Positions 25,299 to 52,800 of a DNA stretch of 64,000 nucleotides are shown one piece after another (the first letter of the stretch is position 1; every line of letters starts with the position of its first letter). Position numbers and translations under genes: made by a program. A model generated the notes under the pieces. That model ran no database searches and was not told where the DNA came from. It saw only the letters and a list, made by a program, of their open reading frames with translations. This stretch comes from Lytechinus pictus (Eukaryota). Where the stretch lies: assembly GCF_037042905.1 (NCBI RefSeq), contig NC_087247.1, forward strand, positions 38,254,001 through 38,318,000, read 5' to 3'.

Positions 25299-25415
25299 TT
25301 AAGGGTATTATGGAGCTGCACGACCCAGCTGCACGACCCTGTCGACCCACCTCCCTTTTTATTTTCTCCTCCCTTTTTTTTTTTTGGGGGGGGGCCGGCC
25401 GGGGGGGGGGGCTGG

Positions 25416-26223
25416 TTTTTGTCTCACCTGCATAGCAGAGTGAGACTATAGGCGCCGCTTTTCCGACGGCGACGGCGACGGCGGCGGCGGCGGCGGCGTC
25501 AACACCAAATCTTAACCTTAGGTTAAGTTTTTGAAATGACAGCATAACTTAGAAAGTATATGGACCTAGTTCATGAAACTTGGCCATAAGGTTAATCAAG
25601 TATTACTGAACATCCTGTCTGAGTTTCATGTCACATGACCAAGGTCAAAGGTCATTTAGGGTCAATGAACTTAGACCATGTTGGGGGAATCAACATCAAA
25701 ATCTTAACCTAAGGTTAAGTTTTTGAAATGTCATCATAACTTAGAAAATATATGGACCTAGTTCATGAAACTTATACATAAGGTTAATCAAGTATCACTG
25801 AACATCCTGCATGAGTTTCACGTCACATGACCAAGGTCAAAGGTCATTTAGGGTCAATGAACTTTGGCCGAATTGGGGGTATCTGTTGAATTACAGCCAT
25901 AAATTTGAAAGTGTGTTGGTCTAGTTCATAAAACTTGGACATAATAGTAATCAAGTATCACTGAACATTCTGTGCGAGTTTCAGGTCACATGATCAAGGT
26001 CAAAGGTCATGTAAGGTCAAAGAACTTTGGCCACGTTGGGGGTATTTGTTGAATTGCCATCATATCTCTATAAGTGTATTGGTCTAGTTCATAAAACGTG
26101 GAAATAAGAGTAACCAAGTATCACTGACCATCTTGTGCGAGTTATAGTAGTTTTCAAAATCAGCACTGCTGCTATATTGAATCGCGTGATGCAGGTGAGA
26201 CGGCCAGAGGCATTCCACTTGTT
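25416..26223 (+). mobile_element. Helentron/HINE (DINE-1/pearl/Tsp-like) non-autonomous element, family A, copy 1
   Basis: 5' hairpin GTCTCACCTGCATAGCAGAGTGAGAC, (GGC/GAC)n microsatellite, tandem units of about 192/163 bp, 3' sub-terminal IR TGCAGGTGAGAC, end TTCCACTTGTT. T-rich insertion site and no obvious TSD. Confidence 0.85.
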
Positions 26224-27359
26224 AAGTGTTTAGTTTCATTACTGAAAATACAAAGCCCCAGTCGCCCATTTCCCCATGTAGCACCGCCCAGAGCTATAGC
26301 GAGTATAATACAGTATAAGCACGTAAAAGGGTAAGTGGTAGAGGGCTACAGGGCCAGGAGGGGAGAGGGTGTTGCAGGGCCCAGGGGACGGTGGTTTTTT
26401 TTTTTTTTTTACATGGAAATTAATGCTGATATAAATTTGGAAAGAAACGAAAGAAAGAAAAAAAGGTTATCATTGTAAATTGGAGATAAAATTGGTCCCG
26501 AGAAATGGCCATTAAAAAAAGGTTTTCACTAAAAAAATGGAGGTCAAATTAGTTTCATTTGTCAATTTTTACCGTCTTTCAAAATACCTGGGGCCCGGGG
26601 GGCCAGTCAAATGTATTGTTGTACGCACGCGTGGCCAAATTATTTCCAAACACCCCCTAAAAGAGTTTTTCTCTGTGTGCAAAATAGGCGGCTGCCCCCT
26701 AAACAAGTTTTTCGTGGGCTTTATTTAAACATTTTGGCCCCTAAACAAGTTGTCGCCAGATATGACCCCGGGGAAAAAGCTTGGGGAAAAAACATACCCT
26801 TAACACGTTTGGCTAGTTTTAAAAAAACTTTGGAAAAAAAACATACCCTAAATATGTTTGACCCTAGCTGCAATTGACCATTGACCAGTCTTTCAAAACT
26901 ACCCCCTTCATGAAATTTGGTGTGACTGCCCCCCCCCCCGACCTGGGGGTGCTGCCTATATGGAGATTAATACACGCTTTTTTGGGGGGAGGGGTGTAAA
27001 ATTAAAGTAAGTATTCAAATTGACTTTAACCCCCCCCCCCCCCTCTAGCAAGTAAGAGCGACTAAGGACTTGGTTCCCAATCCTACCGTTTACCCGATAA
27101 TAATAAATACTGTAGTAATAAACGAATAAAAGTAAGTAAATCTAATTGAATAAATATCATATGAATGATATTGATAATGATAGCAAGAACCTAAATTATG
27201 AATTATTCAAAGCGATAATTGATATAAAATGTATGTTTCTATTTACAGTATATATTTCATTAGATAATTAAAAAAAAACGTCGCTAAGGAGTATCGATAA
27301 TTTCGCGCGTCCCAAATCTATAGATATCGGTATCGCAAAATTTGTTTACGTTTTCGCCA

Positions 27360-27465
27360 GAGTATAATACTTTAAGAGGAGGCTCTCGCAAAAAGATCAA
27401 CAATAAACATTTAGAAACTACATTGTAAATTGCATGTTTTGTTAATACACTTCATCGCTACATCT
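27360..27465 (+). other. Putative non-coding first exon of STRAD
   Basis: Donor CT|GTAAGT at 27465/27466 next to a CpG-enriched stretch. The first coding exon has an acceptor at 31225, upstream of its ATG. The 5' boundary is a guess. Confidence 0.4.
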
Positions 27466-27690
27466 GTAAGTATCTTTCATTTCGTTAAGAAATCATGTTG
27501 AAATATTTCCATATTGTTATTAACATTACCGTACATTTTCTTTGATTGTCTAAGTCGATATAATTAAAGGAAAGTGTAAACATGACACGAAAATGATCAG
27601 GCGGGACAAGCGTGAGAAGCGAGTGGGTATTCGGCTCGGGGGCTCCATCAACTGATCAAGTATAGTCACGTATTGTATTACCGGACACTA

Positions 27691-28357
27691 TTATGATTCC
27701 GGACGCGCGTATTACTGCGTTCTAAAACAAATTCGTACCGTAAGACTTCCGCAATTCAATTTTACAGAGCAATAGGCCTACATAGAACAAGATTGCAAAA
27801 ACAAGGCGAAAAATCCAACTTTTACCATGTTTACCTAATTATCTCTAAAAATGACAGAAAATGCTTAAAATATCATATAAAAAATTATAACATAGTTTTG
27901 TATTAACAATTGATGTATTTTCTAACGGAAATATGGGCCTGATTTGCCGAATTTCAATCTCGTCCACTCCTTCGATCGAATGATGAGGTGTGGTGTAATG
28001 TGATGTATTGTGGGTGATCGTCGATGGCTAGTTCTCAAGGTGGTACCCGTGCGCGAGGTTTACCGTGAGTAGAGCCGTCAATCGGCAGCGCATCGATAGA
28101 ACTTGATGAGCGTCATACGAACGCGAGCATATATTATTGGAAAGTGCCATGGAACATGCAGCTAACAAGACAAAATAAAATAAGTTATCAAACACGAATT
28201 TATTACCAACATCTGCTCAGATTAGATATAAAAAAGCAAATAATACTTGGAATTTACTCATGATATGATATAAGAAGAAAAAAATCACACAAATTTGCTC
28301 TTACATCATTATAATCAAGGATATCTTTACCCGTCCGGCGCGCGTCCGGAATCATGA
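27691..28357. mobile_element. CpG-rich element bounded by 17-bp inverted repeats
   Basis: ATGATTCCGGACGCGCG (27693-27709) and CGCGCGTCCGGAATCAT (28339-28355). Confidence 0.55.
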
Positions 28358-29553
28358 TGTAATTTGTCGCGCACGAAAATAATTGTTTTTCGTGGAGGGG
28401 TATGCGGCAACTGCGATGCAAAGAAAATGGTTGGTAAATATAAAATAATTTTATCATATTCATAATTTTCATAATATATGGAATAGCAAGTGTGATTTTT
28501 TCTTGATTGTATTTCCTCTAGTTGTCATTTTTAAAGCACTGAAATAAAGGTGTCCGGCAATAGGATACACTGCCATATAGCGCGAGCTTCTCCGCCGCCG
28601 AAGCCGAACTAAGTCTAAGAAGATCTTGGAACTGAAGGGGACTTGAAAAATGAAAGCCGGGCTTAAAGCCTGGGTTTAAGAAGGAGGGGGGCGGGGGAGG
28701 TCCGTTTTTTGGGCAATAATGCAAGCCAATGCTGCAATTGCAAAGCTAAGCTAAAGTTAGACAGCTGGCAGCCGTCTGTTTCGAGGAGTTTTTTAACATT
28801 AAATTTTTTTGTTTTGTTTCCTCATACCCAGACGGCTCGCTATCGTGCAGCCACCATTAGGGGACTTACAATGCAAAATCCCCCCGTCGGGGCTCTTCAA
28901 TTTTTGTCTTTAATGAATCAAACATTTGAAAATTAACGCGACCGAAATGCAAATTAACATTCCCTCTTGGCATTAATTGCCAAATAACGGGGAAAATCAA
29001 GTTAAAAGGAACAAAAACAGTGACTTATCTTGGCTGTCGCGCAACTTCACTGCCCTGTTTTATCCGAACTTAATACACATAAACATATGGCCATTGAGTC
29101 CCCTGTACAGATCGCGCTAGAACTTCGGTCTCTGTATTTGGTGAGTGGAGCCAACGGAGTTCAGCTGAACAACCAACATAACAGAGACCGAAGCTTTTGG
29201 TCTAAGCTAAAGTCTGAAGTCCCCTACCTAGTCCTAGGCTAGAGCGAAGTTCGTGCAGGCTCCACTTCACTACCGCTACACTACTACGCTCCACCTACCC
29301 GAACTTCGAGGCCGTGAACTCAATCTGATATTCCGAGTGACAAAGGTGGGATTTTATGGGGGGAAAATATAAAATTCATCCAACATCACGATCTTTAAAA
29401 ACAATTAAAACTAATATTCTTACTTTACACAAAGTTTCACTTCTTTTCCATGCTTCTATCAGTCTCAAAATTGGTGATTTAGAGCCCACATGAAGTTCCT
29501 CAGGCACGTATAAATAACTCGCTGCCGATTTCAAAACATCCCATGCGCGAGGG

Positions 29554-31068
29554 CACTGGCGTAAATCCGTGTTGATGGGTGGGGGGGATGACTGAAATAT
29601 TTTGGCATTTTTTTGCAATCATGTTTTTAGATATGCAAGGAATTGTCATTGAGATGTCCACAGTGGCGTACCGTGGGTCACGGCATTGGGGGGGGGCACC
29701 AGCAAAATTTTTGAATCACTGAGTGAGTGCGCTAGTGAGCGTGCGAAGAGCGCTCAGTTGCCAGTTATACTGACCTAATAGAGACATTTTAAGGACAATG
29801 TCATTAAACGGATATGTATCTCACTGATCAAATAATGCGAGCGCGAAGCGCGAGCTGAATTTTTTTTAAAATTCACACCTCAAAAGGGACATTATAATCA
29901 AATTTGTGTAATCATGATAGGTACCTGTCTCGCTAAACAATGCGAGCGCGAAGCACGAGCTGAAAATTTAGATAATTCAGACCTGAAGTGGGGCATTCTA
30001 AGGTTTCTTTGTAGGAATTAACTAGGACCATACGTATTTCATTAACCAAATGATGCGAGCGCGAAGCGCAAGCTGAAAATTTTTGATATTCAGATCAGAA
30101 GAAGGGACATTTTAAGGACTGATTTTAGGAATTCATGAAGAGCAGACATATCTGATATCTCACCTATCCACTAATGCGAACGTAATCACGGACAGGAAAT
30201 ATTTCATATATACGAAGACCTTAACATGGGGCAATCACTTTTTGAGTCATGAAAAAGAAGCCTATGTCACTACATAAAACAATGATAACTCAAGTGCTAG
30301 AAAATATATTTGGTTTATATTGAATTGAAAACGGGATGTTTTAGTACAACATGATTATATATCTCGTTAAGCAGACAATGCGAGCACCAGAAACAATGAA
30401 GACATAGGCCCTGGGTAAATTATGTTTCATAAAGTTATGATAAAAATGTTTCTTATGTAATGTAACATAACATAATTATAATATAATATAACATTATAAT
30501 GAATAATATTTTCTTCTTTCCCACTACGTTTCTCTTCCTTTCTCCCTCTTTTCTCCTTTTCCCCCTTTTTTTTGGTCAGCCGATGGGGGGGGGGGGATGT
30601 GCCCCCCATGCCCCCCGTAATTACGCCACTGTATGTCCATATGGCAAATACCCCTCCAATATTATTGTCTTTTTTACCCCACGATGGTTTAATGGTTTTA
30701 TTAGAGATTATACATTCAAATTTTTTGACATTCCATCTTATTCCCTTCCCAAAGAGCCCAACAATGATGCATTAGAAGAAACGGGGGTTTCTCTTTAATG
30801 TTATAATAAGGACATAAGTATTTCGTTTGGAAATGGTGAACTGGCTCTTTATTTGCATTTTATGATTCAATAATATTGTTTCATTTGTTAAGTGGTATAT
30901 TAGGAAGAATTTTCACCAATAAAACAATTATCTCTTGTGAATTTTTTTAAAATTTCTTTCTTAAAAAAAAGGTGGGGGGGATGTTTGTACAGGCCATCCC
31001 CCCCTCCTCGAAAAAGTGGGGGGGGGATGTATCCCCCCATCCCCCCTCCCCCCGGTTTTATGCCAGTG
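29554..31068. mobile_element. hAT-like non-autonomous element (middle layer of the nest)
   Basis: TIR CACTGGCGTAAA / TTTATGCCAGTG. Perfect 8-bp TSD CGCGAGGG at 29546-29553 and 31069-31076. Confidence 0.85.
29661..30631. mobile_element. hAT-like non-autonomous element (inner layer of the nest)
   Basis: TIR CAGTGGCGTA / TACGCCACTG. 8-bp TSD GATGTCCA / TATGTCCA. Internal subrepeats ATGCGAGCGCGAAGCGCGAGCTGA. Confidence 0.85.
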
Positions 31069-31241
31069 CGCGAGGGTCCGAGCTCGGACCGGACCCGGTA
31101 CCTTGCGCATATCGCATCCGCATGCGATGTTTTGAAATCGGCAGCGAATTATTTATATGAAATGATTTTGATTAAATAAATGAATTGTTTTTCGTGTTGT
31201 TTATTTAATTTCTTTCTCTCTTTAGAAAGAGGCAGTGCAGT

Positions 31242-34200
31242 ATGGCTGATGTAGAATATGAAGGGGATGCTAGACACTACACACTTTTGACTTTAATCGG
31301 TAAGGAGTAGATATAATGTCTTCTTCTTTTTCTTCCTCAGGGTAGTCTTGTGTCCTTTATACATGAAAATTAATACGAGCGATAATTGAAGTTTTTGTAT
31401 TTCTTATTTCATTTTCTGTACCCTAAAGAAATTGATAAGTTACACGCATGTAGTAAATTGAGAACTACATTGAAGATTGAAAACACCTACATCAATAAAA
31501 ATAAGGCTCCAATGTGCCATAGTGATTATTCACCTAAAATACTGGGACTTCTGAAATAGCAAATACCCCCCCCAAAAAAAAAATGGAGGAAAGGCAACAA
31601 ATATAATAAAAAGGAGGGGCCTTCTTAAGACTAATTGGCTATTTAATATACAGTCTGAAAATATGAAATGAACAAGACTTTCTAATTTATGTAACATTGG
31701 TTAAAATAATGGTGTATGTTATTTGAAATAAGTGTTTGTTTGTTAAAATTGCAGGCCGTAACTTTGAGGGTAATGCTGTGGTCCATATTGCTAGACACTG
31801 TTCTTCTGGTAATCTTGTAGCGGTCAGAAGAGTCAACCTAGACAAAGTCAAAGACAGTTTTGCAGAACTTCGTGTAAGTTTTATTAGAGCTCTGCAATTA
31901 CGGGAAAGAAATTAAATAGTGCAGCAAAATACTTTGTCATCTTGTGGCATGTTGTTTCCCCAGCTCCCCATTATCCAACCATCAAAACCAATTTCTATTT
32001 AGTCTATATAGTCAACTGAAAGTTCTTGGTGAAATCATTGGTTGATGATATAGCCTAGGAGCTCTTCTATCATTTAATATCAATAAACCATTTAATGTTT
32101 ATGTAAACTCCCTAATACAGTCTTGGTGACCATTAATTTAGAATTTTGTCTGCATACGTTTACACCTACATCTTTGCCACTATGGGCAAAATCGTTTAAT
32201 TCCTCTTGTGCCACAGTAATTATAGGGTGCAACCTTAACAGAGTTTTGCATAGACTGTGCTAGCTCAACCCACAATAGCTTTTGATAGGTGAATTGTAAA
32301 GAAAATCTTTTTATATAACAGTGCAATGCACACTTAACTATTGTTTATGTGTGTGTGTATAAAGTACAAAAGACTCGATACACTCTGTGTGTATTGTGAA
32401 TAAAATGTGACTTCAGTTGAAGTTGGTAGTCCATTGTATGTTACTCTAGTCAAACAAAGTGGGCATAGAGTTTAAGTTTTGGAACAACATATTTTGTTTT
32501 TATATCATTCCATGTAGCAAGAATGCCATTTCTCCAAGCTAATGCAACATGAACAAATCCTACCACACTACACATCGTTTGTGAATGGCAATGAATTGTG
32601 GGTTGTGATGCCTCTTATGGAACATGGTAAGAACATCAAACTACTGTATTTACAAGCATTCACCTTTAACATACAGACATGTACTGCGAATTCATTCAGA
32701 GTATTAAAAGCTCAAGATATGATTTTGTAAGCAGCTATTTCAATTAACATTTTTCTTTAAAAATAATGTAATGACTTAAAACCAAAAATGATTCCCCACA
32801 CCAGGACCCCCCACCACCACATTTCGGGTGAAGTTGAAATTCTTATTAGTAATGGGCCCCAACTTAACATAAATCTCAATTCAGATGACTGGTCATTCAT
32901 CTATATATAGAATGATTTAGCTGGTGATTTGATAGGTTTGCCCCTACAAATTCAAAACCCACAACTGTCTTGTGTGAAAACATTCATAATAGAAAATAAC
33001 ATGTATATCATGTAAAGGCATGTATATTTATAATTAATATCATTCATCATTATAATTATTGTTGCATTAGATAGAAGTAATATGATATTTCTTAAATCTT
33101 AACCCACTGAATACAGAATTCTGTAATCCCAACAGCTTTGTACAAGCATTCTGCCAGTTCCAGTGGGCAACAGGTTAATTCTTGACTTTGATTTCTGATT
33201 GATAGGTTCTGCTAGGGATCTACTCGATAGGAATTGTCCTGATGGATTGAAGGAGAGTGTGATAGCACAGATTATGAGAGATGTTGTTCTGGCTCTAGAC
33301 TACATCCATAGAATGGGCTATATCCATAGGTGAGGAGTAGTATTCAGTGTTTTACTATGTATCCACATGATACTAAAAAAATGTACAGTTCGATTGATGA
33401 CATGAATAATGTGATAAATTGTTGATTTTTAACATCAAGTACTAGGTGAAGTATTTAGATAAGCATTATCAGGTGATGCTATTCATTTAAAAAGCCATAA
33501 AAAAGGCACACATTAATGTTACTCACATGCGCTATTGACACATGACCGCAGAAAAAAACAAAGAGGAGTGCATACCAAGGAGAGATTAACATTCTTAGCT
33601 TTGCCTGGCTTTAGCCATGTGATTCCAAATAAGATTTATTTTTGCAAAGAGAATTTTGGTTCCTATTTAAAAAAAAAGTCATTTCTGTTGTTTGGATTGG
33701 TTTCAGTGGATGAGACAAACTATCACTTCCTTGGTGCTATGCATGTTGATTTTGATTCAGTACCATCTTTCCTCTGATTTGATTTAGAAAGAAATTGTCT
33801 CAGAAATGATTGTTTGTCCCTTTACTTTCACCAACGGGACATTTAATTATTTGCTTTATACCTCTATGATTTTTGTCTCGCCTGCATAGCAGAGCGAGAC
33901 TATAGGCGCCGCTTTTCCGACGGCGGCGTCGTCAACATTGAAATCTTAACCAAGGTTAAGTTTTTGAAATGTCATCAGAACTTAAAAAGTATATGGACCT
34001 AGTTCATGAAACCTGGACATAAGTTTAATCAAGTATTACTGAACATCCTGCACGAGTTTCAGGTCACATGACCAAGGTCAAAGGTCACTTAGGGTCAACG
34101 AACTTTGACCATGTTGGGGGAATCAATATTGAAATCTTAACCAAGGTTAAGTTTTTGAAATGTTGTCATAACTTAGAAAGTGTATGGACCTAGTTCATGA

Positions 34201-37200
34201 AACTTAAACATAAGGGTAATAGTGTATCACTAAACATCTTGCGTGAGTTTCAGGGCACATGACCAAGGTCAAAGGTCACTTAGGGTCAACGAACTTTGAC
34301 CATTTTGGGGGTATTTGTGGAATTGTCATCATAACTTAGAAGTATATGGACCTAGTTCATGAAACTTGGACATCAGTTTAATCAAGTATTACTGAACATC
34401 CTGCCTGAGTTTCAGGTCACATGATCAAGGTCAAAGGTCACTTAGCGTCAGCGAACTTTGACCATGTTGGGGGAATCAATATTGAAATCTTAACCAAGGT
34501 TAACCCTAAACAGGCCGGGGGGGTTGAATCAACCCCCCTCAACATTTTCTGCGATCATTCCGCCGCGCGAATTTTTTTTACCGCGCCACTCACAGACTTA
34601 ATATTCTTAAGTCTCGCGCATCTTTTGAGACCAAATTTACGACGCCCGGGTACGCGATTCCGAAATTACGCGACATTTCGTAAGTGCATGTCAGACAAAA
34701 AAATGTTTCAAAACGTGACTTTGTGTACAAAGTCAATGCAAATTGAGTTTTTCTCATTTTATTCATAAAGATATGATTATTTTTACTTTGAACAGCTGAA
34801 ATCAATTGATTTTAGCATAATTATGCTTCAAAAAAGGTTGTGCAATAAATCTGGTGAAAAAAACAAAGAAAAACAAAGAAATACATAAAAAATTCATAAC
34901 ACAATAAAATACATAAGAAATTGATTTCCAAACCGAAGTTTTTTTCAATTGCGATTGTTAAGAATGCTACAAAGAATATTTTTACCAAAAATTAGCATTC
35001 TAGGAGCTTTATTTAGTGAATTAGAGCAAAAAGTATGATTTATGCATAAATTAGCATAATTAATTCATATAAAGTAAAATCTCATTATTTTGGAAAATTT
35101 TACCATACAGCCTTGTAGATTACATCGCACACTACCAGCGTGCAAATTTTTGCGGCTCTCGCACGATCGGCGGCCAAGATCTCAGGGGGGGTTGAATCAA
35201 CCCCCCGGCCACAGAACAGCCAAAAAGCCCGGCCTAATTAGGGTTAAGTTTTTGAAATGTTGTCATAACTTAGAAAGTATATAGACCTAGTTCATGAAAC
35301 TTAGACATAAGGGTAATAGTGTATCACTAAACATCTCGTCTGAGTTTCAGGTCACATGACCAAGGTCAAAGGTCATTTAAGGTCAATGAACTTTGGCCGT
35401 GTTGGGGGTATTTGTTGAATTGGCATCATAACTTTTATGGATCTACACATGTAGTTCATGAAACATAGACATAAGGGTAATCAAGTATGTTTTGCACATG
35501 TCTTAGGTCACCGTCACATGATCATGGTCAAGGTCATGTTGGGTCAATGGACATAGCATTTAATTATCATATGAGAGTTTTCTTTTGTGAATAATTATTC
35601 TATAGCTGTTTTCAAAGTCAGCACTGCTGCAATATTGAATCGCGTAATGCAGGCGAGACTGCCAGAGGCGTTCCACTTGTTACTAGTATCGTTCATAATA
35701 TCCGGTTTGCAGTACAGTCTATTTCAGGGTTTATTAGATATTATGAAATGAATGTTCTTTTGCCCTTTTAATGCATTCTTATAAAGAAATATCTTAGATG
35801 CTGTTGTCTTTCACAAAAAGGACATTGACTAAATTCTTATCCAATGTAAAATGTTATACACTCTGGTCTGAAAAGTGACCAAGATATAATGATGTGAATC
35901 TTCAATTCTGTGAAAGCCTGCACATGATCAACCTTCATAGTGTGCAAAAGACTTGATGAGTTTGATATCAATTGTAAGATCAATTGTAGCCTTTGTGTAA
36001 CATAATAGTGCAGGCCAGGTGCCCCATCCATAACTCAATATATGCAATCAGTCTTACATGTTTTGCAAAGACTTATGATTGATTTTAATCGTAAGATTTA
36101 TGATTGATTTTAATCGTAAGATTGATTGTATTATGTAACATTGCACAGGTTAGGTAACCCCATAGTTTTACCGAATCCATTTTCAGTTTCCACAGGTGAT
36201 TCCTATTCCATGTTACAAAACTTATAACATTAAAGAAAAAAAAAATTGCAATCCCTGTTAATAATTTGTTGTTCATAATCATATAATCTGAATTTCAGGA
36301 GTGTAAAGGCCAGTCACATCCTGCTTACCCAATCCGGTGGTGTTCACCTATCTGGACTGAGAACAGCAGTGAGTATGGTGGAAGATGGCAAGCGACTCAA
36401 GGCAGTTTATGATTTCCCCTCACTGACCACAGTAAGGAACTTGCCCTGGCTAGCAACTGAGGTACTAGAACAGGTATGTTTGTATTTGCATTTTACTGTG
36501 CTAAATCCAGGGTGAAATTTGTATGTTTGTGTGGAATAGGATAACAGAAAAAAATAGATAAATTAATATTATATGAAGTATGAATTTTGTTCTTCAAGCA
36601 TATTCTACATGTCTTCACAATTGTCAGCAAATGATATTTGACAGTTTACTTTACCATGATCTGAGCATGTCTTTTAATTTTCAAATGACAGGAGAGATTT
36701 AATTTGCTTCAGCAGAGAGTATCAACAACTCAATTCTGGCCATGTATGAAGAGGACCAAAGTAAAGAATTTTAGTAATTTTCAAAGTTTTTTTGGATTTT
36801 TGGATTTTTTTGGGCCAACGTTTTGTTTTATGCCTTCAGATTTCTGGTGTTAATTATCATTGTATTGCAAAAAAAAAATGATTATATCTGCTGTTATCTT
36901 TTTATCATAGAATCTTCTTGGATATGATACCAAGTCTGACATTTACAGTGTTGGTATCACTGCATGTGAGCTGTCAAATGGATGTGTTCCTTTTTCAGAT
37001 ATGGTACCCATGAAGGTAAATTTTCTTTTACAGTGGTTCTCATTTCTAACAAAGGAAAGGTATTTTTAAGTGTTTATTTTTATTGTAATTGGTAACCTAC
37101 ATCAGCAACAAAATTGAGGAATTCCTCCAGTTATAAAAAATATCCTAATCCCTTTATAAGCTCACAGAGACATTAAATGGCATGTGATATCCGCTACGAG

Positions 37201-39881: not shown

Positions 39882-40675
39882 AGAATTCAACCGTTCCATC
39901 AAGATCTCTGAGAGTTTGAAAATGCCCAGTAACCTATGCAGTCCAAGATAGGTGGTGTTACTTACATAACAGAGGTTCCTCACTCATGTACATAGTGACA
40001 ACTATGTATCTGAACACTGATAGCACATGATGTGATACAAATTTCTTTGCCATTGCATGGGATTTTTAAAGCTCTTGATATAGCATTAAAGTGAGGACTG
40101 TAAAGTTGGCTTGTTCATCAAAGCACGCTTACAGATGTATGTAAGTCAGAGTTTGTGGTAGCCGTGTAGCTGCCTTACATGTAGAACAATATAAAGAGTA
40201 AAAAGTGCAATAGTTAAGAGAGTAGCTACATGAAAATTTAATCTTGAAGCTTCATTTGGCTGTGTGCATCATCTATTTTTTTCCATAAAGGTAATATCAG
40301 ATGACCACTTTACCAAAGAAAACTGTTATTGTTCAGTTATATTTGTTTTATGTCGAACTCGGTATCCACTCAGTCCATAAAAACATGAAGTTAATTGTAC
40401 ATGATGTGATACAATGGATTCATTGTATGGGATGATATGTCATGCATGTATGTATCTCTGTGACTTTAACTTGATGACGGGTCATGTATCTTTTTTTAGA
40501 GAAAGTCTTTGTCAATCAGTGTCAACTGTTACCACATCCTGATCTAGTAAGTCCTGACAAAACAAAAACCAAACATTTCTAAATGATAAATCTAGGCTGA
40601 AACTTAAGTACACTGAAAGTCAGCAACACAGATAGGCAAATGTTGGTACCTGCATTATCATTGCTTGGAAAAAGA

Positions 40676-40776
40676 TTGTCCTCTGGCAGGCGATTGGTTT
40701 GAATCTTATCCCATATGAAGAATGTGTATTTTGCCTTGCAAGGGCTAGTGTGTGTGAACACTGGAGACCAATCTAC
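40676..40776 (-). pseudogene. Inverted decayed fragment of the desaturase first coding exon
   Basis: The reverse complement aligns without gaps to 46868-46968 (79/101 nt by manual count). It translates VDWSPVFTHTSPCKAKYTFFIWDKIQTNRLPED versus [33 protein letters not shown]. Confidence 0.9.
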
Positions 40777-43700: not shown

Positions 43701-45991
43701 TCTCTGTTCATGAAAAAAGGGTATACTAAGGCATCATTAAAGTTTGATCCGACTGGGTTGTCTATTGTGTTACTTAAATATTTTACTTTTCATTTTCTTA
43801 CCATTAGACTGCGAAAAGAAATCACACCTTATACTAAAAACTTGACATTTAAGAAACCTTAAATTGTATGTCCTGAAACTTGCTCACACTTATAATTGAA
43901 TAGTCAATTTTTGTCGCAAAAGGTATCCATACTTGAGAATGTAAATGACAATATGCAATTTCATAAAACTTTGTTTACAACTTAAAAAAACAAACTTGTG
44001 CATATATCATAATGAGAAGACATCCCTCCAATTTCATAATCTTATTAAAATTTTCAGATTAGTTAATTTATGTTATATTTTTTGTTGTTGAAACCGTTTT
44101 GCGATGATATTTTTTTATACACTTATTAATAGAGGCTTCCACTTTTCGTGCACAGCCAAGCATTTTGTTATCCAGCTGTTGACAAAGGCATGACTTGGGA
44201 GCGAGACCCAATGTTAAGTTAACTTGTATTCTTTGACACCTTTGTCTGGGGATTTACTGATGTACACGGGGGTATTATACCTGTCGCACGTCCCCCTTGC
44301 TCATTGTATCGAATACAAACTGTCTTGTATTGTTTTTCTTTCGATGTCCACAATCAAAGAGCCGATTATTGAGCATAATTGGCCTGAACGACACTGCATT
44401 GTCCAGTTTTAAAGATGGATGAAGGGGATGAAACATAACTGGTAGAAGCGTGTACACCAATATGTCAAGGGTTGCAGCATCCATTACCCTTGCTGGTTGA
44501 TCTTGAGGCCTTAACATCCGTGGCAAGAATGAAGATACTAGATATTCGAGGGTGATCAGTTGAAAACTCTTAATATAAAGTGGAGCGCCGCTGGCGCCGT
44601 TGTAGCACTGATCTCTTCATCTGTAGACTAGTCCCAGACTATACAGATCAGTGGTATTTCGGGACTTGTTCTGAGATAATTAATGGACAGTGAGCAGGAT
44701 TGCTGGTAATTTTAAGTGTCTGGAGAGCATGAGAATGAACTGTTCAAACTCCGACAGAGATTGCAAACCGAGGGACTTGATCACCTTTGATACCCTTTTC
44801 AGGAACAGCTACCGCCGAATCGCGATCCTACAGCTAATGCTAGCCTATTTCTCATCGTCAGCGCAGTATCTGGAGCCGCTACTTTCTTGGACTTTGGTAT
44901 GTTCCCCATTATCATTTGGTTTGATTTCTAGTATTTTGTATAATATTTTTAATAAATACGGTAACATACTATGAAATCATGGTCACAGCCAGGCAATCAC
45001 ATGGACTTCGGGTTATTCTGATTTCATTATACCCCATGAAATTCAGAACGTGCGCGTTACTGAGATGTAACTTTCGAGTTCATTGCTGGATGGTAGCCTT
45101 AGCCAAGGTGGATGTTTGAAAATACCTCTTTGGAGTCTGCGGTGTTTTTTTTTGCTCTCCATCTCCCATTATTACCATGTTTGCTGCGTTAGCGCCCTCT
45201 TACCTCATCCTGAACGCGCAATTCGAAAGGAATAGTGGTCCGATCATGTTTTCATGTGCTGATGATAGATCGCTGAAAGGGGTTCAAAGTTCACATGACG
45301 TCGATGTTCCAATTTCTCATTCCCATCCCCATTGTCAAGTTCAACTCGCTCCAATGTGCCGTGCAGGTGTTCCAGTGAACGCTACAGCACAATGGTTGCT
45401 ATGCATCAAAACGACATTTGTTAGGCCAACATCACGTACTGTACCACTCAATACATGGAGCGGGAAATGAACTTGTGATTATAAAACCCATTAACAAAGT
45501 AATTGATCAATGTTGATAACGAATATTATACGCTGCAATTTTGAAAAGTATCATTCCTTATTCAAATATATCTAAATAAAAATCCATATTGACACAGTAC
45601 TCGAAACCACACTTTACAAAGGTTGTGGTCATTACGATGGTTGTCGATCAAAAGAGCCTGTTATGAATGTGTTCAATCATTAACGCCGAAAAAAGGAGGA
45701 AGTAGAGCCTGCATGTAAATATATTTCTTGAATTGCAGAGGTAAGTATGGGTATATTATGTTTTGTGATGGATGGAATACGACATTTGCAGTGCTTTTCC
45801 GTTTCAATGAAGCCGTTTCATTTACGGTTTTCCATGGATATAATCGTCACCTTGTGCCAAATGAAAATATTACACCTCTCTATCTACTATGTTTCCGGAG
45901 TCTAGATTCGAATAATTCCATACTGATCTGCTACAAGACCGCATAGTCGAAAAGTGAGCCGTAGTATATGTCCCTCTTGTACAATGTATAA

Positions 45992-46407
45992 AGGCCACCG
46001 CACACCTTACGACTGTTCGCGATCCGATTGTGGAACAAATCGCATTTTGCTAATTTTCTGAAGATGTGAATGGAACATATCATTTTATTTGAGGTTAAAA
46101 TTAATTGAAAGAATAATCTTATAACCATTTTGGAAGATTGCAAGCCTTTATTTGGAGTAAAGGCCAACTTAGTTTCTAATCGTAGCCAATCGTACGACTG
46201 CTATGACGTCATTACGACTAGATATTAAATTATCTTTTATTCTAAGAAGGATGATAGCATAGTCACATATTTGATCATAGGTATTCGTATACGATGATTT
46301 ATAACATTACACAGTAAGATATTCCAAGTCTCAATATTAGCATCAAATTCTACAACATTTTATTCTGAAATCGGGTCGCAGACCAGTCGTAAGGTGTGCG
46401 GTCGCCT
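45992..46407. mobile_element. PIF/Harbinger (Tourist-like) MITE
   Basis: TAA|AGGCCACCGCACACCTTACGACTG ... CAGTCGTAAGGTGTGCGGTCGCCT|TAA: 24-bp TIR with 1 mismatch and a 3-bp TAA TSD. Confidence 0.85.
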
Positions 46408-46828
46408 TAAGGCTAAAGCAACATAATGATATGCGTTCACTACCCAGGGGTATCATACCCATTTCTTGATAGCTTTCTCGATAGTACCATGATATAACGT
46501 AAATTGCCTCTTGAACGACAGTTCTTACTTCGATCTCTTTATTTCAAAGCGAGTATCATAAAACACACATGAACGTCATCTGGATGCTATCTTTTTCGTG
46601 ACGATCTATAAATAAGCAGAGAAATTGTTAAAATGTGCTTGTTTGAGAACCCAAAGCACAATCATGGTGTAATTGAAGTAAAAGTAATCGGCCTGTGTGA
46701 GTCCGTCGTATGCTAATTTGGATTTATTCACCAATAAATTATTGTTATACAGGCTTTAAAATATATATCCAACCATTCTCATGACCAGTACTCGCTTCAG
46801 GAGCAACGTAAGTTTTCTATTATACATC

Positions 46829-49800
46829 ATGCGTACATCAATGGTTCTGCGGTCAAAGACTGCATCGGTAGACCCATCTGATTCGTTCACACACACTGGC
46901 CCTTGCGATGCAACACCCAAATTCTTCACATGGGATGAGATTCGAACCCATGCCCTGCCAGAGGACAAGTGGTTGGTGATAGAAGGTGACGTTTATGATA
47001 TCACCGAATGGTCGAAAAGACATCCAGGCGGAAAGGCGATCATCAGTCACTACGCTGGACAAGATGCATCGGTAGGTTATATAAAGTTATAAGTTTTATC
47101 GGAAAATATCATATGTCACTGAGAAATGGTTATCATAAAGAGATATTAAAAAGTTTTTTTTGAACATCTTACACAGTCTAAATTGATCCTCGTTTGCAAT
47201 TACATATACATGTATTATATCGTGCTCTGTATAGCTATATCGCAGCTATCTACAATATCCAACATTCCAATGAGAACTACGTGAATGTGTCTATTTTTTC
47301 TTACGCGAATAACTAGTTTGAATATATGATTTATATTTTTCTTGCAGGATGCCTTTATCGCCTTCCATCGAGACCTGCAATTCGTTAGCAAGTATATGAA
47401 CATGTATCGAATAGGAAAGGTCAAGGATTATAGCGAGCACATATCTGATCTTTCTCGAGATTTCAGAGACCTTAGAAACCGGACCAAGAAAATGGTAATA
47501 TTTTATTAGCTCTATAATTGTATTTGAAAATGAATTTTGAATCATACACTGCATTTTGTCTGTTAACCTTGTTTGCTTAATGGCAATATAATTTGCTGTC
47601 TCGTTTGTCTGATGGCAAGAATAACCTATAAATGGTTCCGTCTGTAATTAATTGTCGACTGATTGTTGAACGCTTTACATTGTATAGCGTAATTCTGCAC
47701 TGTTTATCATTTTCAAAATATTGTTCAAGTCTCAAAATCACAAATTGTTTTATAGGTATAACTTTTCAATCTTTCGAAATTCACCATGAACTGTACCGAA
47801 ATACCATGAATTAATTTTTGTTCGTCTCTTTTATTCACGGGTCATAGGCCTCCTTAGTATATTTCTTTTCAAGGAATTAGTGACATTAATATTACGTTTA
47901 TACTATACATAGGGGGCCTATTTTGTTTACAAAATAAACAAAATTTAGCCCTTGCTTTCGTTCCTCTTATCAAGATACTGAGGGTTACGTAATGAGTCAA
48001 ATACTTCGAAAGGATGGCGTATGGTGCAAAATTTGTGGTAAATTAGACCATTTTGAATTGAAATTTATTTTGTATAGATTCTGACATAACTTTCAGAAAA
48101 TTAGATTTCGCCCTTTCTTTTTTTCTTATTTCCCTCATTAAAAAGAAAATCTTTCTTGATCGTGGAGTTTGGGGAGGGGGTAGGGGCAAATGTCCCAAGT
48201 CTTTCTAATCTACACCGGTAAATATTGCTACTTTGGTTGCACCCCTGATGTTACAGCGAAGTCATAATCGGTATCTTTAATCGCTTTACCACCAGGGACT
48301 TTACAAGCCAAACTATTGGTTCTATGTCTTCCAACTCTCACACATCATCGCCCTTGAGATCACAGCCTATCTCATCGTCTCATTCCTTGGTGGAACCGTT
48401 CTTTCCTGGATACTTGCAGCCTTGCTTATCGGGACCGGTCAAGTTCAAGGATCGTGGCTCAACCACGACTTCGGTCACCTGTCCGTCTTCAAGTCCACCA
48501 AAGCCAATCTCTTGGCTCAGAAGTTCGTGTTTTCTGGAATTCAGGTAGGGCATATTATTCATTGATCGAATGGAATTGGAGCGAAAGTTTTCGTCTTGGG
48601 AGTCTTTATAATTAAATTCAGCCTGCATAATGACCAACTCGATACTTTCAAGTCGCAGTCTGCAATCTCGAGTATGTATACCTATGCAATTAGGATAAGT
48701 GGACGATCCCGTCTTTGGGGTTCTACATATATATTACAATACATACTTCGGAATTGTAAAGTTGTTTATCATGGACACCTGTTACATGGTAAAATAATGT
48801 GATCTTATTTATATTTGTCAGCAGTTTGAATAACAACAGTATAATTTCGATATGAAATCTTCCCAATTTTCCATCACACTTTCTCTCTAAATTACCCCCT
48901 GCTCGTTTTCTTCTCTTTCATACTCTTTTCTTTATCTTTACATCACAAAGGGTGTCTCGGCATCATGGTGGAAGTATCGTCATTATTTGCACCATTCGAA
49001 ACCAAACGTGGTAAGAGCTGACCCCCTTTCTAAAAAAATCACAACGGGCATTGTCGGCACCATTAGTTTCATCAAATTTTGTGTAATAATATTCAGCCGA
49101 TGAAACGCTTTACACGTCAAATTTTTGTCTCACCTGCATAGCAGAGGGGGACTATATAGCCGCCGCTTTTCTGACGGCGGCGGCGGCGTTAACACCAAAT
49201 CTTAACCGAAGGTTAAGTTTTTGAAATGACAGCATAACGTAGAAAGTATATAGACCTAGTTCATGAAACTTGGACATAAGAATAATCAAGTATTACTAAA
49301 CATCCTGGCTTAGTTTCAGGACACATGACCAAGGTTAAAGGTCATTTAATGTCAATGAACTTAGACCATGTTGGGGGAATCAACAACAAAATCTTAACCC
49401 AAGGTTAAGTCTTTGAAATGTCATCATAACTTAGAAAATATGGACCTAGTTCATGAAACTTAGACATAAAGTTAATCAAGTATTACTGAACATCCTGCCT
49501 GAGTTTCAGGACACATGACCAAGGTCAAAGGTCATTTAGGGTCAATGAACTTTGGCCAAGTTGGGGGTATCTGTTGAATTACCATCATAACTTCAAAAGT
49601 TTATTAATGTGATTCATGAAACTTAAACATAAGAGTAATCAAGTATCACTGAAAATCCTGTGCGCATTTCAGGTCACATGACCAAGGTCAAAGGTCATTT
49701 AAGGTCAATGAACTTTGGCCATGTTGGGGGTATTTGTTGAATTACCATCAAAACTCTGTAAATGTATGGATTTAGTTCATAAAACTTGGAAATAAGAGTA

Positions 49801-52800
49801 ATCAAGTATCACTGAACATCTCATGCGAGTTTCAGGTCACATGACCAAATTCAAAGGTCATTTAAGGCCATTGAACTTTGGCCATTTTGGAGGTAATTAT
49901 TAGATTGCTGTCATAACTTTCAAAGTTTATAGATATACATGTAGTTTTTAAATGTGGATATATAGGGGTAATCAAGGATCACTGACAAGACTTAGGTCTC
50001 ATGATCAAGGTCAAATGTCATTTATTGTCAATGAACGTAGTATTGTATACTTATATGAATGGTGTTTTTTGTGATTTATTTATTAGTAGTTTTCAAAGTC
50101 AGCACTGCTACCATATTGAATCGCGTGATGCAGGTGAGACTGCCACCCTGCCAGAGGCGCTCCACTTGTTTTAATATTAATCATTAAATTCAAAATTTCT
50201 TATTTTTGGCTCGTTCACAATTTTCCGGAACAGACGTACTCCATAGGCCAATCCTTGGTATATACCCATGCACAATTCAGTCCCCTCGAATCGTTTGCCT
50301 TTGATTACGTCGTTGTCCATAACGACGGTCCTTCTATTGCAAACACTCTTTGTTAAGTATGTTTGATGAAATATTCTTTTACTGTGTTGTCTATGTTTTT
50401 AAATAAAATGCCATAATTATTATCAAATGGACTTATTGTACCACATTTGTTACATTCAATTTTTATATACATTTATGAGAACAGCAGAATAAAATATTTG
50501 AAATGTACTTTCCTTCATTTTCAATCTAAACTTTTTACAAGTTGTTTGATAAAAACCATTGTTCATTTTAGATTGATAAGGACCCCGACATCAAAATGGA
50601 GATCTTTCTATTGGTTGGCGACACCATACCGATCGAGGTGGCTAAGTCAAAGAAAGGTTTCATGCCTTATCAACATCAACATCGGTACTTCACTGTTTGT
50701 AAGTCAAGCATTCTTCATAACAATTTCATGAAATTCAAATGACATTGCAACTTTCGAAGACTTGACTCACTTGAATCACTGTGTCCTTAAACAAGCTAAA
50801 CATGCCAAAAGAAAGTACGTTAGATTAATAGCGTAAACTATCATTCACAGATTATTCTTTTATTTTGATTTATCAGTACAAAACTTAAATCATTGTATAT
50901 ATTGAAGTGAATTATCTACGTGTATCTTTTACTTTATGGCTGTTATCTTATAAGATACAATAATGCAAATATGTATTCTCTTACATTGTTCCCCTTCTCT
51001 TCATCTCACAGTGTCGCCACTTTTGCTAGTTGTATATTATTACTACGAGGTTTTACGGTTCGTCTTCAAAAGAAAAGAATGGCTGGTAAGATTTTAAATA
51101 CTGTCAGGCCTTCTTACACAATAACAAAGTGATATAAATCTGATAATCAAATGATCAGATCACATCATTCCCCATTGGAGAGTTTGGGACTTAATGCTAT
51201 TTTAGGGTAGTAAATCTCTGTTTGCTGCATCTTTCATTTGATAATGCTTTACGTTATTTAGTATTCAACATTTTAACACACTCATAATTATCTGTTTTAT
51301 TTTGTATGGTGCAATGATAAGAAATAACAAAACAAAAAACAAAACTCTTAAGGATTTTTTTTCAAACATACAATGTTTATGAGAATATGATTGTGTTAAA
51401 CCAAATCATATTTGCTGAAGATCAACCAATGTGTTGGTATTTGATTATTACCTAATCAGCAGTCGCCTAAAATGTGACGTATTTTATCATTGAAATGATA
51501 TAATGTATATTATACTCTTCGATTAATGCCTCCCTTTTCGATACATTTACTTTCATATTTTTCTATCCATGCATTGTATTCCTCATTTTTCTTTGTTATT
51601 TGAAATTGCAAAGGGACAATCCGGCTGCCCCCTGTCACTCCTAAATACAATTAATAATATATCAATATTAATATTGTACTTTCTTTCTCTGCAGGAACTT
51701 TTCTTGATGGTGTTATACTTCATTCGCTGTTTGTATCTCTTCACACCTATTACTGGAATTGTCGGAGTATATACCATCTTATATCTTAGCAGGTATATTA
51801 TTCACGTTGTCTGAAATTATTACAAAATATTTTATAATTATGGTGGCTATAGATATTAGCCTATTAATGTTAGTTGTAGGCTACGAAGATCATGTTTTAA
51901 CAAATTGGCTCCAACTGACATGCCATGATGCTTCCCGACAATAATGATAATAATTAAATTCATTCTTTTGTTATATCTCTACTGAACATTTCTGAATGTC
52001 GATATCATGGCTTTGTTTCTTTTCTGCAGGGTGATTCAGAGTATGTGGTTCATATGGGTTAGTCAATCAAACCACATCCCAATGGCAGTAGAACACGATG
52101 AACATGATAAACATTGGGTCCCTTTACAGGTAATTGTCAATGAACATTAATGTTATTGAATGATACAGAAAACACGGTCTTTGGATATGTTATAGAGAGG
52201 GAGAGCAAGGGATAAACAGAAGGAGTGAGACAGACAAAGAAAGAGAGAGAGAGAGGGGGGGGGGGAGAGAGAAGCACGACGACGGCGTAGATTAACATGT
52301 TAACGAAGATGATGGTGATGATGATGATAACGATGATGATGATGATGATGATGATAATGATTATTTTATAAAAGAGCGAAGACGCCAATATAAGAAAGAA
52401 GCCAATTAAAGTGGAAGAGAACTACAGCATGAGTAATAAACTAAAACTCAGCATGTTCGGGGTTGGGAACTTTCAAGTTATCTTCGTGCGGAGATGGCGC
52501 TCTTTAAATTTGAGTTTGTTTGCCGGAGATTTTACAGCGGAAATTTTTGTTACTGGTTTTCTAAAGGGTAGCAATACTAACCCCCCTCCCTATTGAGCCC
52601 ATTTCAATTATTTTTCTCTCATGTAGATTATGTCCAGATACGATTGATACTTCATCAATTGACACAAAATGATTGCCAGATTTTATAACTTTACGATGTA
52701 TATCATCACCCACAGATGCATGCTACTTGCAACCTCGATTCTTCCCCTTTTATTGATTGGTTCACGGGCCATCTTAACTTCCAAATTGAACACCAGTAAG

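What the first reader, a model, noticed from the sequence alone, without database searches (positions are those of the whole stretch)
25416..50170. Helentron-like element distributes tandem arrays of composite nuclear-receptor response elements, including inside a fatty-acid desaturase intron
Seen: each tandem unit of family A contains (A)GGTCA-CA-TGACCA-AGGTCA-A-AGGTCA-TTTA-GGGTCA-A-TGAACT, up to six half-sites in about 45 bp. Perfect AGGTCAAAGGTCA occurs at 25642, 25834, 25997, 34075, 34266, 34428, 35363, 49522 and 49685. Established: AGGTCA-N-AGGTCA (DR1) binds RXR/PPAR, HNF4 and COUP-TF; DR4 binds TR/LXR; IR1 binds FXR/EcR-type receptors; CAAGGTCA is the NR5A/ERR extended half-site; vertebrate FADS genes are PPAR-responsive. 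Inference: a mobile, self-amplifying nuclear-receptor cassette that could wire lipid and energy genes (desaturase intron 4, a STRAD intron, the divergent promoter region). Alternatively it is a host-repressor or transposase-binding array.
Basis: partly seen in the sequence, partly recalled or inferred. Interest (0 to 1): 0.7.

Follow-up and report, generated by a model that had tools for sequence, protein, structure and literature searches.

The report
Rolling-circle transposon carrying receptor-like repeat boxes
Three copies of an ordinary, very abundant non-autonomous rolling-circle transposon (a HINE) sit in or near a STRAD gene and a fatty-acid desaturase gene; each of their tandem units holds a well-kept box of nuclear-receptor-type AGGTCA motifs, but nothing yet shows that receptors use it or that it regulates these genes.

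Summary
All nine perfect AGGTCAAAGGTCA sites are at the stated places, and every unit has the described cluster of half-sites.

The arrays are the central repeats of three same-strand copies of one HINE family (25416-26223, 33870-35681, 49122-50170). A HINE is a non-autonomous Helentron of the DINE-1/pearl/Tsp type. Six of its seven defining features are clearly present and the 3' stem-loop is weak.

Copy 2 lies in a STRAD intron and copy 3 in intron 4 of a front-end desaturase. The "divergent promoter" setting of copy 1 is unverified.

The family is very abundant: more than 11,000 distinct contigs match it in a sister species. Landing in two metabolic genes therefore means little.

New here:
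- The roughly 50-bp RGGTCA box is the least variable part of the unit.
- It is the only part shared with a second HINE family in the window (1163-1969, minus strand).
- Similar boxes occur in unrelated repeats on metagenome contigs.
- RNA from the family is abundant and about 170:1 on the element's sense strand, which I cannot explain.

Receptor binding is plausible but untested, and wiring of lipid genes is unsupported. This scan had already noted the same kind of element elsewhere in this genome.

The parts
25416..26223 (+). HINE family A, copy 1. T5 plus 5' subTIR 25416-25433; IR 25435-25446; (CGG)n 25467-25498; tandem array 25499-26143 (two units of 192 bp, then 163-bp units); 3' subTIR 26189-26201; end ..TTCCACTTGTT 26213-26223. 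RGGTCA boxes at about 25628-25677, 25820-25869 and 25983-26032.
33870..35681 (+). HINE family A, copy 2, in a STRAD intron. The 5' subTIR GTCTCGCCTGCAT, the IR GCAGAGCGAGAC and the 3' subTIR ATGCAGGCGAGAC (35647-35659) changed in concert relative to copy 1. Array 33932-34503 and 35244-35600. Boxes at about 34061-34110, 34252-34301, 34414-34463 and 35349-35398.
34504..35243 (.). Nested MITE that duplicated TTAA (CCCTAA...TTAGGG termini; TTAA at 34500-34503 and 35244-35247). It interrupts one unit of copy 2. It is not part of the HINE.
49122..50170 (+). HINE family A, copy 3, in desaturase intron 4, 110 bp after the exon's GT donor at 49012. T5 plus 5' subTIR 49122-49139; degenerate IR 49141-49152; array about 49190-50085; 3' subTIR 50128-50140; end 50160-50170. 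Boxes at about 49318-49367 (mutated), 49508-49557, 49671-49720 and 49834-49883.
   Evidence: (family 5' boundary from loose ends at 49121/49122)
1163..1969 (-). HINE family B. It has the same type of termini (TTTTTGTCTCGCCTGA ... TCAGGCGAGAC ... CCGCCTTGTT). Its units of about 120-145 bp share only the 24-nt box GGTCAAAGGTCATCTAGGGGTCAA with family A.
9995..10140 (-). Degenerate fragment of family A: the left flank plus the start of the first unit.
48891..49011 (+). Desaturase exon with the second histidine box ([14 protein letters not shown]). It is the last exon before copy 3.
50572..50739 (+). Open frame holding the next desaturase exon (DPDIKM...YQHQHRYF) after copy 3. Exact splice sites were not mapped.
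   Evidence: the FA_desaturase profile continues at 52689-52796 and 53342-53620
33199..33330 (+). Open frame holding the STRAD exon (..[14 protein letters not shown]), Pkinase positions 84-122. It is the last exon before copy 2.
36279..36512 (+). Open frame holding the STRAD exon ([10 protein letters not shown]...[11 protein letters not shown]). It is the first exon after copy 2.

Best explanation
These are three copies of one family of non-autonomous Helentron (a HINE, like DINE-1, pearl, Cg_HINE and the sea-urchin Tsp elements). Such elements are thought to be copied by the Rep-helicase-endonuclease of an autonomous partner. That enzyme would recognise the shared ends: a T run, a 13-bp subterminal inverted repeat with its nearby complement, and the ..CTTGTT 3' end. 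New copies are placed in T-rich DNA without a target duplication.

Between the ends lie a short (CGG)n tract and a tandem array of nucleosome-length units, 190 bp then 163 bp, whose number changes by unequal exchange.

Each unit carries a box of about 50 bp made of RGGTCA repeats: a forward DR1, a GGGTCA and a reverse DR1, preceded by AGGTCAcaTGACC. I infer that the box is kept because it docks a protein that helps the family persist or amplify. By sequence alone, the best candidate binders are host nuclear receptors that bind DR1 sites (COUP-TF, HNF4, RXR, TR2/4 types).

The STRAD and desaturase genes are bystanders of a very abundant element, not demonstrated targets.

Shown: the element's identity, its anatomy, its abundance, the intron positions, the lower variability of the box, and the sharing of the box across families. 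Inferred: that the box is a docking site, and who binds it.
For: Anatomy:
- Three collinear copies are 84-88% alike.
- A 5' T5 run precedes a 13-bp subTIR that is perfectly complementary to the 3' subTIR. In copy 2 the 5' subTIR, the IR and the 3' subTIR changed in concert.
- The 5' hairpin folds with z = -4.8.
- A (CGG)n tract of variable length, same-orientation tandem units and a shared ..CTTGTT end are present, with no target duplication.
- This matches the published definition of HINEs (PMC4067079; PMC7492417).

Abundance:
- 11,283 and 13,048 distinct contigs of two DNA runs of a sister species lie on 265 bp of the element.
- Their summed word depth is 1.5-3.2 million, against 25-60 on unique DNA.
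- The flanks beyond position 49121/49122 are diverse.

Box:
- It has 0.80 substitutions per column against 1.41 outside (Fisher p = 3e-4). Windows that overlap it are among the best kept of the unit (the box window ranks 7th of 114).
- Box-containing stretches of the reads show the highest consensus agreement. In RNA they reach 0.91-0.93 against 0.80-0.88 elsewhere. In sister-species DNA they reach 0.66-0.76 against 0.48-0.67.
- Family B shares only this box with family A: alignment score 31 against 16.2 +/- 2.3 in shuffles, and nothing significant outside the box.
- Metagenome contigs L001 and L004 are 67% alike overall but 100% alike over a 35-nt RGGTCA box. L003 has such clusters next to a HINE-like ..CTTCTTGTT end.
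- The half-site is kept while spacing and orientation differ between families. That fits a flexible binder such as nuclear receptors.
Against: - No binding, chromatin or reporter data exist here.
- Only 11 units from 3 related copies were compared, so the p-values overstate independence.
- Within the box, half-site cores are not significantly better kept than the spacers (0.67 against 1.06 substitutions per column, p = 0.13). The first AGGTCA is mutated in 5 of 11 units, while the spacers CA and A never vary.
- The box lacks CpG, which may lower its mutation rate.
- A DNA-copied, non-coding element has no obvious need for a transcription-factor site.
- The genome-wide per-position table from the reads was cut off, so there is no family-wide column profile.
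- The 3' stem-loop is only 3-4 bp and folds no better than shuffles.
Confidence: 0.5

Rival explanations
1. Neutral relic. The box has no function. It looks conserved because the copies descend from a few recent master copies, because it lacks CpG, or because short direct repeats such as AAGGTCA-AAGGTCA arise and are homogenised by slippage and unequal exchange. The literature describes regions of reduced variability, palindromes and microsatellite-like motifs in HINE core repeats as possible hot spots for array rearrangement.
For: The sample is small and its units are not independent. Cores and spacers do not differ significantly. Published HINE core repeats in clams and oysters also show low-variability segments with a palindrome or microsatellite-like motif of quite different sequence (PMC3879986; PMC7492417).
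Against: Families A and B share nothing alignable except the box. A different repeat family on metagenome contigs keeps a 35-nt box at 100% while the rest is 67% alike. The kept unit is always RGGTCA, whatever the spacing.
Confidence: 0.28
2. Signal for the transposon's own machinery. The RGGTCA repeats would be iteron-like docking sites for the partner's Rep-helicase, as short repeats are for HUH-type Rep proteins of rolling-circle replicons. Alternatively, the inverted DR1 pair would form a single-strand hairpin that acts during rolling-circle copying.
For: The element is moved by an HUH-type enzyme (PMC4067079). The box folds as single-stranded DNA: GGTCAAAGGTCAT pairs with ATGAACTT(A/T)GACC, with z = -3.1. 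The box travels with a particular type of terminus in families A and B, and perhaps in L003.
Against: There is no GGTCA at or near the termini, where the enzyme must act. Family B has only direct repeats and no inverted arm. The two changes specific to copy 2 in the arms are not compensatory. No autonomous partner is in the window to test.
Confidence: 0.15
3. Copies have been co-opted as receptor-driven enhancers that put the desaturase, STRAD and other lipid or energy genes under common control.
For: Perfect DR1 and other receptor-type arrangements occur in every unit. Two copies lie inside such genes. Transposon-borne binding sites that rewire networks are known, for example DINE-like elements and dosage compensation in Drosophila miranda, as cited in PMC4067079.
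Against: The family matches more than 10^4 distinct contigs in the sister species, and the window holds five HINE copies in 64 kb. Gene hits are therefore expected by chance. Copies 1-3 are 12-16% diverged and copy 2 is broken by another transposon. The first unit of copy 3 has mutated half-sites. No read starts pile up inside the element (table 6). No enrichment test was possible.
Confidence: 0.07

Closest known systems
HINEs / DINE-1-like non-autonomous Helentrons (Thomas et al. 2014, PMC4067079). These include Cg_HINE of the Pacific oyster (PMC7492417), pearl and DTC84 of bivalves (PMC3879986), and the Tsp elements of the sea urchin Strongylocentrotus purpuratus (as cited in those papers).
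   Same: T runs at the boundaries; subterminal inverted repeats of about 13 bp; an internal complement of the 5' repeat; a microsatellite; same-orientation central repeats of 140-190 bp; a low-variability segment in the repeat; no target duplication; high copy number; copies in introns.
   Different: The sequences of the ends and units match none of the oyster arrays held in the paper's supplement. The microsatellite is CGG rather than a 4-nt motif. The 3' stem-loop is very short. The low-variability segment here is an array of RGGTCA motifs, which I did not find described in the papers searched.
Transposon-borne binding sites that spread a regulatory motif. One example is the DINE-like (ISX) elements that carry MSL-complex sites in Drosophila miranda, cited in PMC4067079. 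From my own knowledge, not checked here: Alu DR2 retinoic-acid elements, and Helitron-borne heat-shock elements in Caenorhabditis.
   Same: A high-copy mobile element carries a ready-made cluster of sites for a host DNA-binding protein and scatters it through genes.
   Different: In those cases binding and regulatory effect were shown. Here only the motif and its conservation are shown.
Iterons of rolling-circle replicons: short repeats bound by HUH Rep proteins (my own knowledge, not tested here).
   Same: Several direct copies and one inverted copy of a 5-7-nt motif lie next to a potential hairpin, in an element moved by an HUH enzyme.
   Different: Iterons lie beside the nick site. Here the repeats are internal, occur dozens of times per element, and are absent from the termini.

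Membership tests
HINE (non-autonomous Helentron) | Subterminal inverted repeats of about 11-13 bp at both ends | tested here: met
   GTCTCACCTGCAT pairs with ATGCAGGTGAGAC, perfect in copies 1 and 3. Copy 2 has GTCTCGCCTGCAT and ATGCAGGCGAGAC, also perfect through a concerted change.
HINE (non-autonomous Helentron) | Short inverted repeat complementary to the 5' subTIR, a few bases downstream | tested here: met
   GCAGAGTGAGAC lies 1 nt after the subTIR. The hairpin folds at -13 kcal/mol with z = -4.8 in copy 1. It is degenerate in copy 3.
HINE (non-autonomous Helentron) | Microsatellite after the left flank | tested here: met
   A (CGG)n tract of 32 bp in copy 1 and shorter in copies 2 and 3. 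Reads show insertions and deletions of 3 nt there.
HINE (non-autonomous Helentron) | Central tandem repeats, all in one orientation relative to the flanks | tested here: met
   Units of 190-192 bp and 162-163 bp occur in the same order in all three copies. Tandem junctions of both types are seen in thousands of reads.
HINE (non-autonomous Helentron) | Palindrome or stem-loop after the 3' subTIR | tested here: inconclusive
   Only GCC-AGA-GGC, a 3-4-bp stem, is present in all copies. The fold is no better than shuffles (z between -0.1 and +0.8).
HINE (non-autonomous Helentron) | T runs at the boundaries, insertion in T-rich DNA, no target duplication | tested here: met
   All copies run TTTTTG...CTTGTT and their flanks show no duplication. 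The family 5' boundary at 49121/49122 comes from loose ends that run into diverse AT-rich flanks. No empty site was examined.
HINE (non-autonomous Helentron) | An autonomous Helentron partner (Rep-helicase-endonuclease) with the same termini | not tested
   None is in the window, and the genome could not be searched with these tools.
Nuclear-receptor response element | RGGTCA half-sites in a recognised arrangement (DR1 and others) | tested here: met
   There are 9 perfect AGGTCAAAGGTCA. A reverse DR1, TGAACTTTG(A/G)CC, occurs in most units, and CCAAGGTCA is also present.
Nuclear-receptor response element | Half-sites kept better than the spacers and the surrounding sequence | tested here: inconclusive
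   Box against the rest of the unit: 0.80 against 1.41 substitutions per column. Cores against spacers inside the box: 0.67 against 1.06, p = 0.13. The sample is 11 non-independent units.
Nuclear-receptor response element | Bound by a receptor, and confers receptor-dependent transcription | not testable with these tools
   This needs EMSA, ChIP or CUT&RUN, and reporter assays.

The most novel reading that the evidence does not exclude
The RGGTCA box is a selected feature shared by a whole lineage of HINEs in sea urchins and other marine invertebrates. It recruits DR1-binding nuclear receptors (COUP-TF, HNF4, RXR, TR2/4). The element would use them for access to open chromatin or for transcription in the germ line or embryo. 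As a by-product, it would seed the genome with tens of thousands of receptor sites from which host enhancers can be drawn. This would give the long-unexplained conserved segments of HINE central repeats a concrete, testable function.
Probability: 0.2. Interest if true: 0.75.

Novelty: new member of a known kind. Interest (0 to 1): 0.42.

Why it matters
HINEs are among the most abundant repeats of many invertebrate genomes. Why they carry nucleosome-length tandem units with a conserved segment is not known.

Here the conserved segment reads as a textbook array of nuclear-receptor sites. It is the only thing shared by two otherwise different families. That turns a vague idea, 'constraint in satellite-like repeats', into an experiment: does a named receptor bind?

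If receptors do bind, a single transposon family would account for a large share of receptor sites in the genome. If they do not, the motif match is a caution against reading function from consensus matches in high-copy repeats.

The almost purely one-stranded RNA of the family may also say something about how Helentrons choose or survive in their targets.

Tried and rejected
- **Family-wide per-position variation from reads.** The 'other letters' table was cut before the element, so only consensus-agreement values of loose ends could be used.
- **More copies from public collections.** An exact scan of metagenome contigs with a 25-nt left-flank pattern found nothing. A scan with the box found 4 contigs that share only the box, and one of them is a GC-rich bacterial chance hit. 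The same scan of viral contigs found nothing.
- **Fetching copies through spurious peptides.** A search with an open frame of the array found no candidate.
- **Oyster Cg_HINE arrays.** Those held in the paper's supplement do not contain this box or these subTIRs.
- **The 1985 Tsp paper.** It is not held.
- **Known RNA families.** Rfam and tRNA scans of the window were empty, so the abundant RNA is not a known RNA family.
- **T-run asymmetry as the cause of the RNA strand bias.** T5+ runs are only 1.2-2.1 times commoner on the sense strand, too little for 170:1. Rejected as the sole cause.
- **Hairpin as the conserved feature.** Rejected as the main explanation, because family B lacks the inverted arm and the changes in copy 2 are not compensatory.
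- **Other half-site clusters** at 11144, 17485, 19197 and 26859 have no repeats within the window. Nothing was concluded from them.
- **Pfam on long open frames** of 1-25 kb and 26-40 kb gave nothing. Exons were then found from shorter stop-to-stop frames.
- **No joined coding sequence was built.** Exons were searched one by one by reference.
Full report
**Observation.** The pattern AGGTCAAAGGTCA occurs exactly nine times in the window. The nine are not independent events. They lie in tandem arrays with periods of 190-192 bp and 162-163 bp at 25499-26143, 33932-34473 and 49197-49930. These arrays belong to three collinear copies of one repeat that are 84-88% alike. GGTCA/TGACC density is 17.7 per kb inside the copies and 1.5 per kb outside.

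**What the element is.** Each copy has the same parts, in this order:
- a run of five T;
- GTCTCACCTGCAT;
- one base later, its complement GCAGAGTGAGAC;
- a (CGG)n tract of variable length;
- the tandem array;
- about 45 bp of unique sequence;
- ATGCAGGTGAGAC, the exact complement of the 5' motif;
- ..CCAGAGGC..TTCCACTTGTT, after which the three copies diverge.

No target duplication is present. The 5' hairpin is strong (z = -4.8). In copy 2 the 5' motif, its internal complement and the 3' motif carry a concerted change (A>G, T>C, T>C) that keeps all three complementary. This shows that the inverted-repeat relation is under constraint and that copy 2 comes from a different subfamily.

This is the published anatomy of HINEs, the non-autonomous derivatives of Helentrons. 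That anatomy comprises 13-bp subterminal inverted repeats, a nearby internal repeat, a microsatellite, central repeats, a 3' stem-loop, T runs at the boundaries, and insertion at TT without duplication (PMC4067079; PMC7492417). The one weak feature is the 3' stem-loop. It is only GCC-AGA-GGC and folds no better than shuffles. The boundaries are 25416-26223, 33870-35681 and 49122-50170.

Copy 2 is interrupted at 34504-35243 by a 740-bp MITE with CCCTAA..TTAGGG ends and a TTAA duplication.

I did not verify that. The HINE papers do cite DINE-1-like 'Tsp' elements and Helentron proteins in Strongylocentrotus purpuratus.

**Gene context.** I searched exons one by one and built no joined model.

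- *Desaturase.* A Cyt-b5 exon lies at 46781-47092. It is followed by frames with DAFIAFH, HDFGH and [10 protein letters not shown]. They match FA_desaturase profile positions 5-46 and 52-82. After copy 3 come frames that match positions 190-220 and 222-251. Stranded RNA covers four blocks before the copy: 46.79-47.15, 47.33-47.51, 48.23-48.59 and 48.95-49.04 kb. Copy 3 therefore lies in intron 4 of a front-end desaturase, 110 bp after the donor site.
- *STRAD.* Frames before copy 2 (33199-33330, Pkinase positions 84-122) and after it (36911-37066, positions 173-199) are collinear. The frame at 36279-36512 matches human STRAD alpha structures at E = 4e-14. Copy 2 lies in a STRAD intron.
- *Copy 1.* It lies at least 5.5 kb upstream of the first STRAD coding exon I could recognise (31.7 kb), and it sits among other repeats. 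I could not confirm a 'divergent promoter'.

**Abundance.** I laid two raw, stranded RNA runs of the same species and the contigs of two DNA runs of a sister species on 46700-49385. The sister species differs by about 7% in unique DNA. The result was 11,283 and 13,048 distinct DNA contigs, nearly all on the 265 bp of the element. Their summed word depth was 1.5-3.2 million, against 25-60 on unique sequence. The flanks beyond 49121/49122 were diverse and AT-rich (consensus agreement 0.38-0.40), which fixes the family's 5' boundary. The depth is not a copy number, but the family is clearly present in the order of 10^4 or more units and predates the split of the two species. The window alone holds five HINE copies. 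Finding copies in a desaturase gene and a STRAD gene is therefore no evidence of a link to lipid or energy genes.

**The box.**
- *Within the window.* In the 11 units the box has 0.80 substitutions per column and the rest of the unit 1.41 (Fisher p = 3e-4; the units are related, so this overstates the case). Windows overlapping the box are among the best kept of the unit; the box window ranks 7th of 114.
- *In the reads.* Stretches that contain the start of the box have the highest consensus agreement: 0.91-0.93 against 0.80-0.88 in RNA, and 0.66-0.76 against 0.48-0.67 in sister-species DNA.
- *Cores against spacers.* Inside the box, half-site cores are not significantly better kept than the spacers (0.67 against 1.06, p = 0.13). 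The first AGGTCA is mutated in 5 of 11 units, while the spacers CA and A never vary.
- *A second family.* A second HINE family lies on the minus strand at 1163-1969. It has the same type of ends (TTTTTGTCTCGCCTGA ... TCAGGCGAGAC ... CCGCCTTGTT) and units of about 120-145 bp. These align with family A only over GGTCAAAGGTCATCTAGGGGTCAA: score 31 against 16.2 +/- 2.3 in 2000 shuffles, and nothing significant outside it.
- *Other organisms.* A scan of metagenome contigs with the 21-nt core found three eukaryote-like contigs. L001 and L004 share a repeat that is 67% alike overall but identical over a 35-nt RGGTCA box, with further GGTCA islands kept amid diverged spacers. L003 has such clusters just before a HINE-like ..CACTTCTTGTT end.

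The recurrent kept unit is thus RGGTCA, in varying spacing and orientation. This argues for a protein-binding array rather than a fixed structure. The inverted DR1 pair of family A can form a 12-13-bp hairpin (z = -3.1). However, family B has no inverted arm, and the two arm changes in copy 2 are not compensatory.

The HINE literature already describes low-variability segments, palindromes and microsatellite-like motifs in core repeats, and two motifs shared between otherwise unrelated oyster units, without naming a binder. I found no paper that links HINE repeats to nuclear-receptor motifs.

**RNA.** About 0.26% of the reads sampled from each rRNA-depleted library lie on these 265 bp. Depth is 3,500-14,000 against 10-20 on the desaturase exons. 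The reads are 120-170:1 on one strand, the same polarity as the + strand exons, so the RNA is sense to the element. At least 73% of the reads that cover the 5' boundary continue into diverse flanks, and no pile of read starts is seen. The transcripts therefore enter from upstream at many loci.

All five HINE copies in the window are sense to the gene that holds or abuts them: STRAD and the desaturase on +, and an EGF/SEA-type gene on -. T runs are only 1.2-2.1 times commoner on the sense strand, which cannot give such a ratio.

I cannot explain this. The candidates are:
- strand-specific insertion relative to transcription, as HUH transposases of bacteria show relative to replication;
- loss of antisense copies from genes;
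- strand-specific RNA stability.

The result gives no support to enhancer-like bidirectional transcription from the box.

**Verdict.** The object is an ordinary, old (12-16% diverged), very abundant HINE. The reading as a receptor cassette that wires lipid genes is not supported.

What remains of interest is that the RGGTCA box is the conserved, cross-family module of these HINEs. My estimates are:
- about 0.6 that the box is a functional docking array;
- about 0.35 that nuclear receptors occupy it in vivo;
- below 0.1 that it regulates the two genes here.

The same kind of element and motif was already noted by this scan on other parts of this genome (s1-322081, s1-320161, s1-327744). The one follow-up among them reached the same sober conclusion.

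Noticed in passing
window 49122-49385 (family-wide signal): RNA of HINE family A is abundant (about 0.26% of sampled reads on 265 bp) and 120-170:1 on the element's sense strand. Transcripts read in from diverse upstream flanks. All five HINE copies in the window are sense to their host or neighbouring gene.
   Followed up: partly
window 34504-35243: A 740-bp MITE with CCCTAA...TTAGGG termini and a TTAA duplication (piggyBac-like; Kolobok also uses TTAA). It inserted into the CTTAACCAAGGTTAAG palindrome of a HINE unit.
   Followed up: partly
window 1163-1969 (minus strand): A second HINE family. It has related termini, but its units share only a 24-nt RGGTCA box with family A.
   Followed up: yes
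window 33870-33900 and 35647-35659: A concerted three-way change (A>G, T>C, T>C) in the 5' subTIR, the internal repeat and the 3' subTIR of copy 2 keeps them complementary. This marks a separate subfamily and shows constraint on the ends.
   Followed up: yes
L001:941-1225, L004:10-293, L003:2860-3165: Eukaryote-like metagenome contigs carry other repeats with RGGTCA clusters. L001 and L004 are 67% alike but identical over a 35-nt box. The L003 cluster lies just before a ..CACTTCTTGTT end like a HINE 3' end. The source organisms are unknown.
   Followed up: partly
window 46880-46969: Reads of the opposite polarity cover part of desaturase exon 1, and all of them carry T>G at 46909. This fits a second copy of this exon, transcribed antisense elsewhere (compare note s1-329212 on the STRAD 3' UTR).
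   Followed up: no
window 2300-9500 (minus strand): Frames of an EGF-like / transmembrane / mucin-like gene on the minus strand, for example C..EGFTGPRC at 4850-5080 and a transmembrane stretch at 3667-3879. Pfam found nothing in the long frames that were tried.
   Followed up: no
window 25370-25412 and 26390-26412: Copy 1 is flanked by long T/G/C homopolymer runs and a 13-bp duplication (25314-25339). It seems to be nested in another repeat.
   Followed up: no
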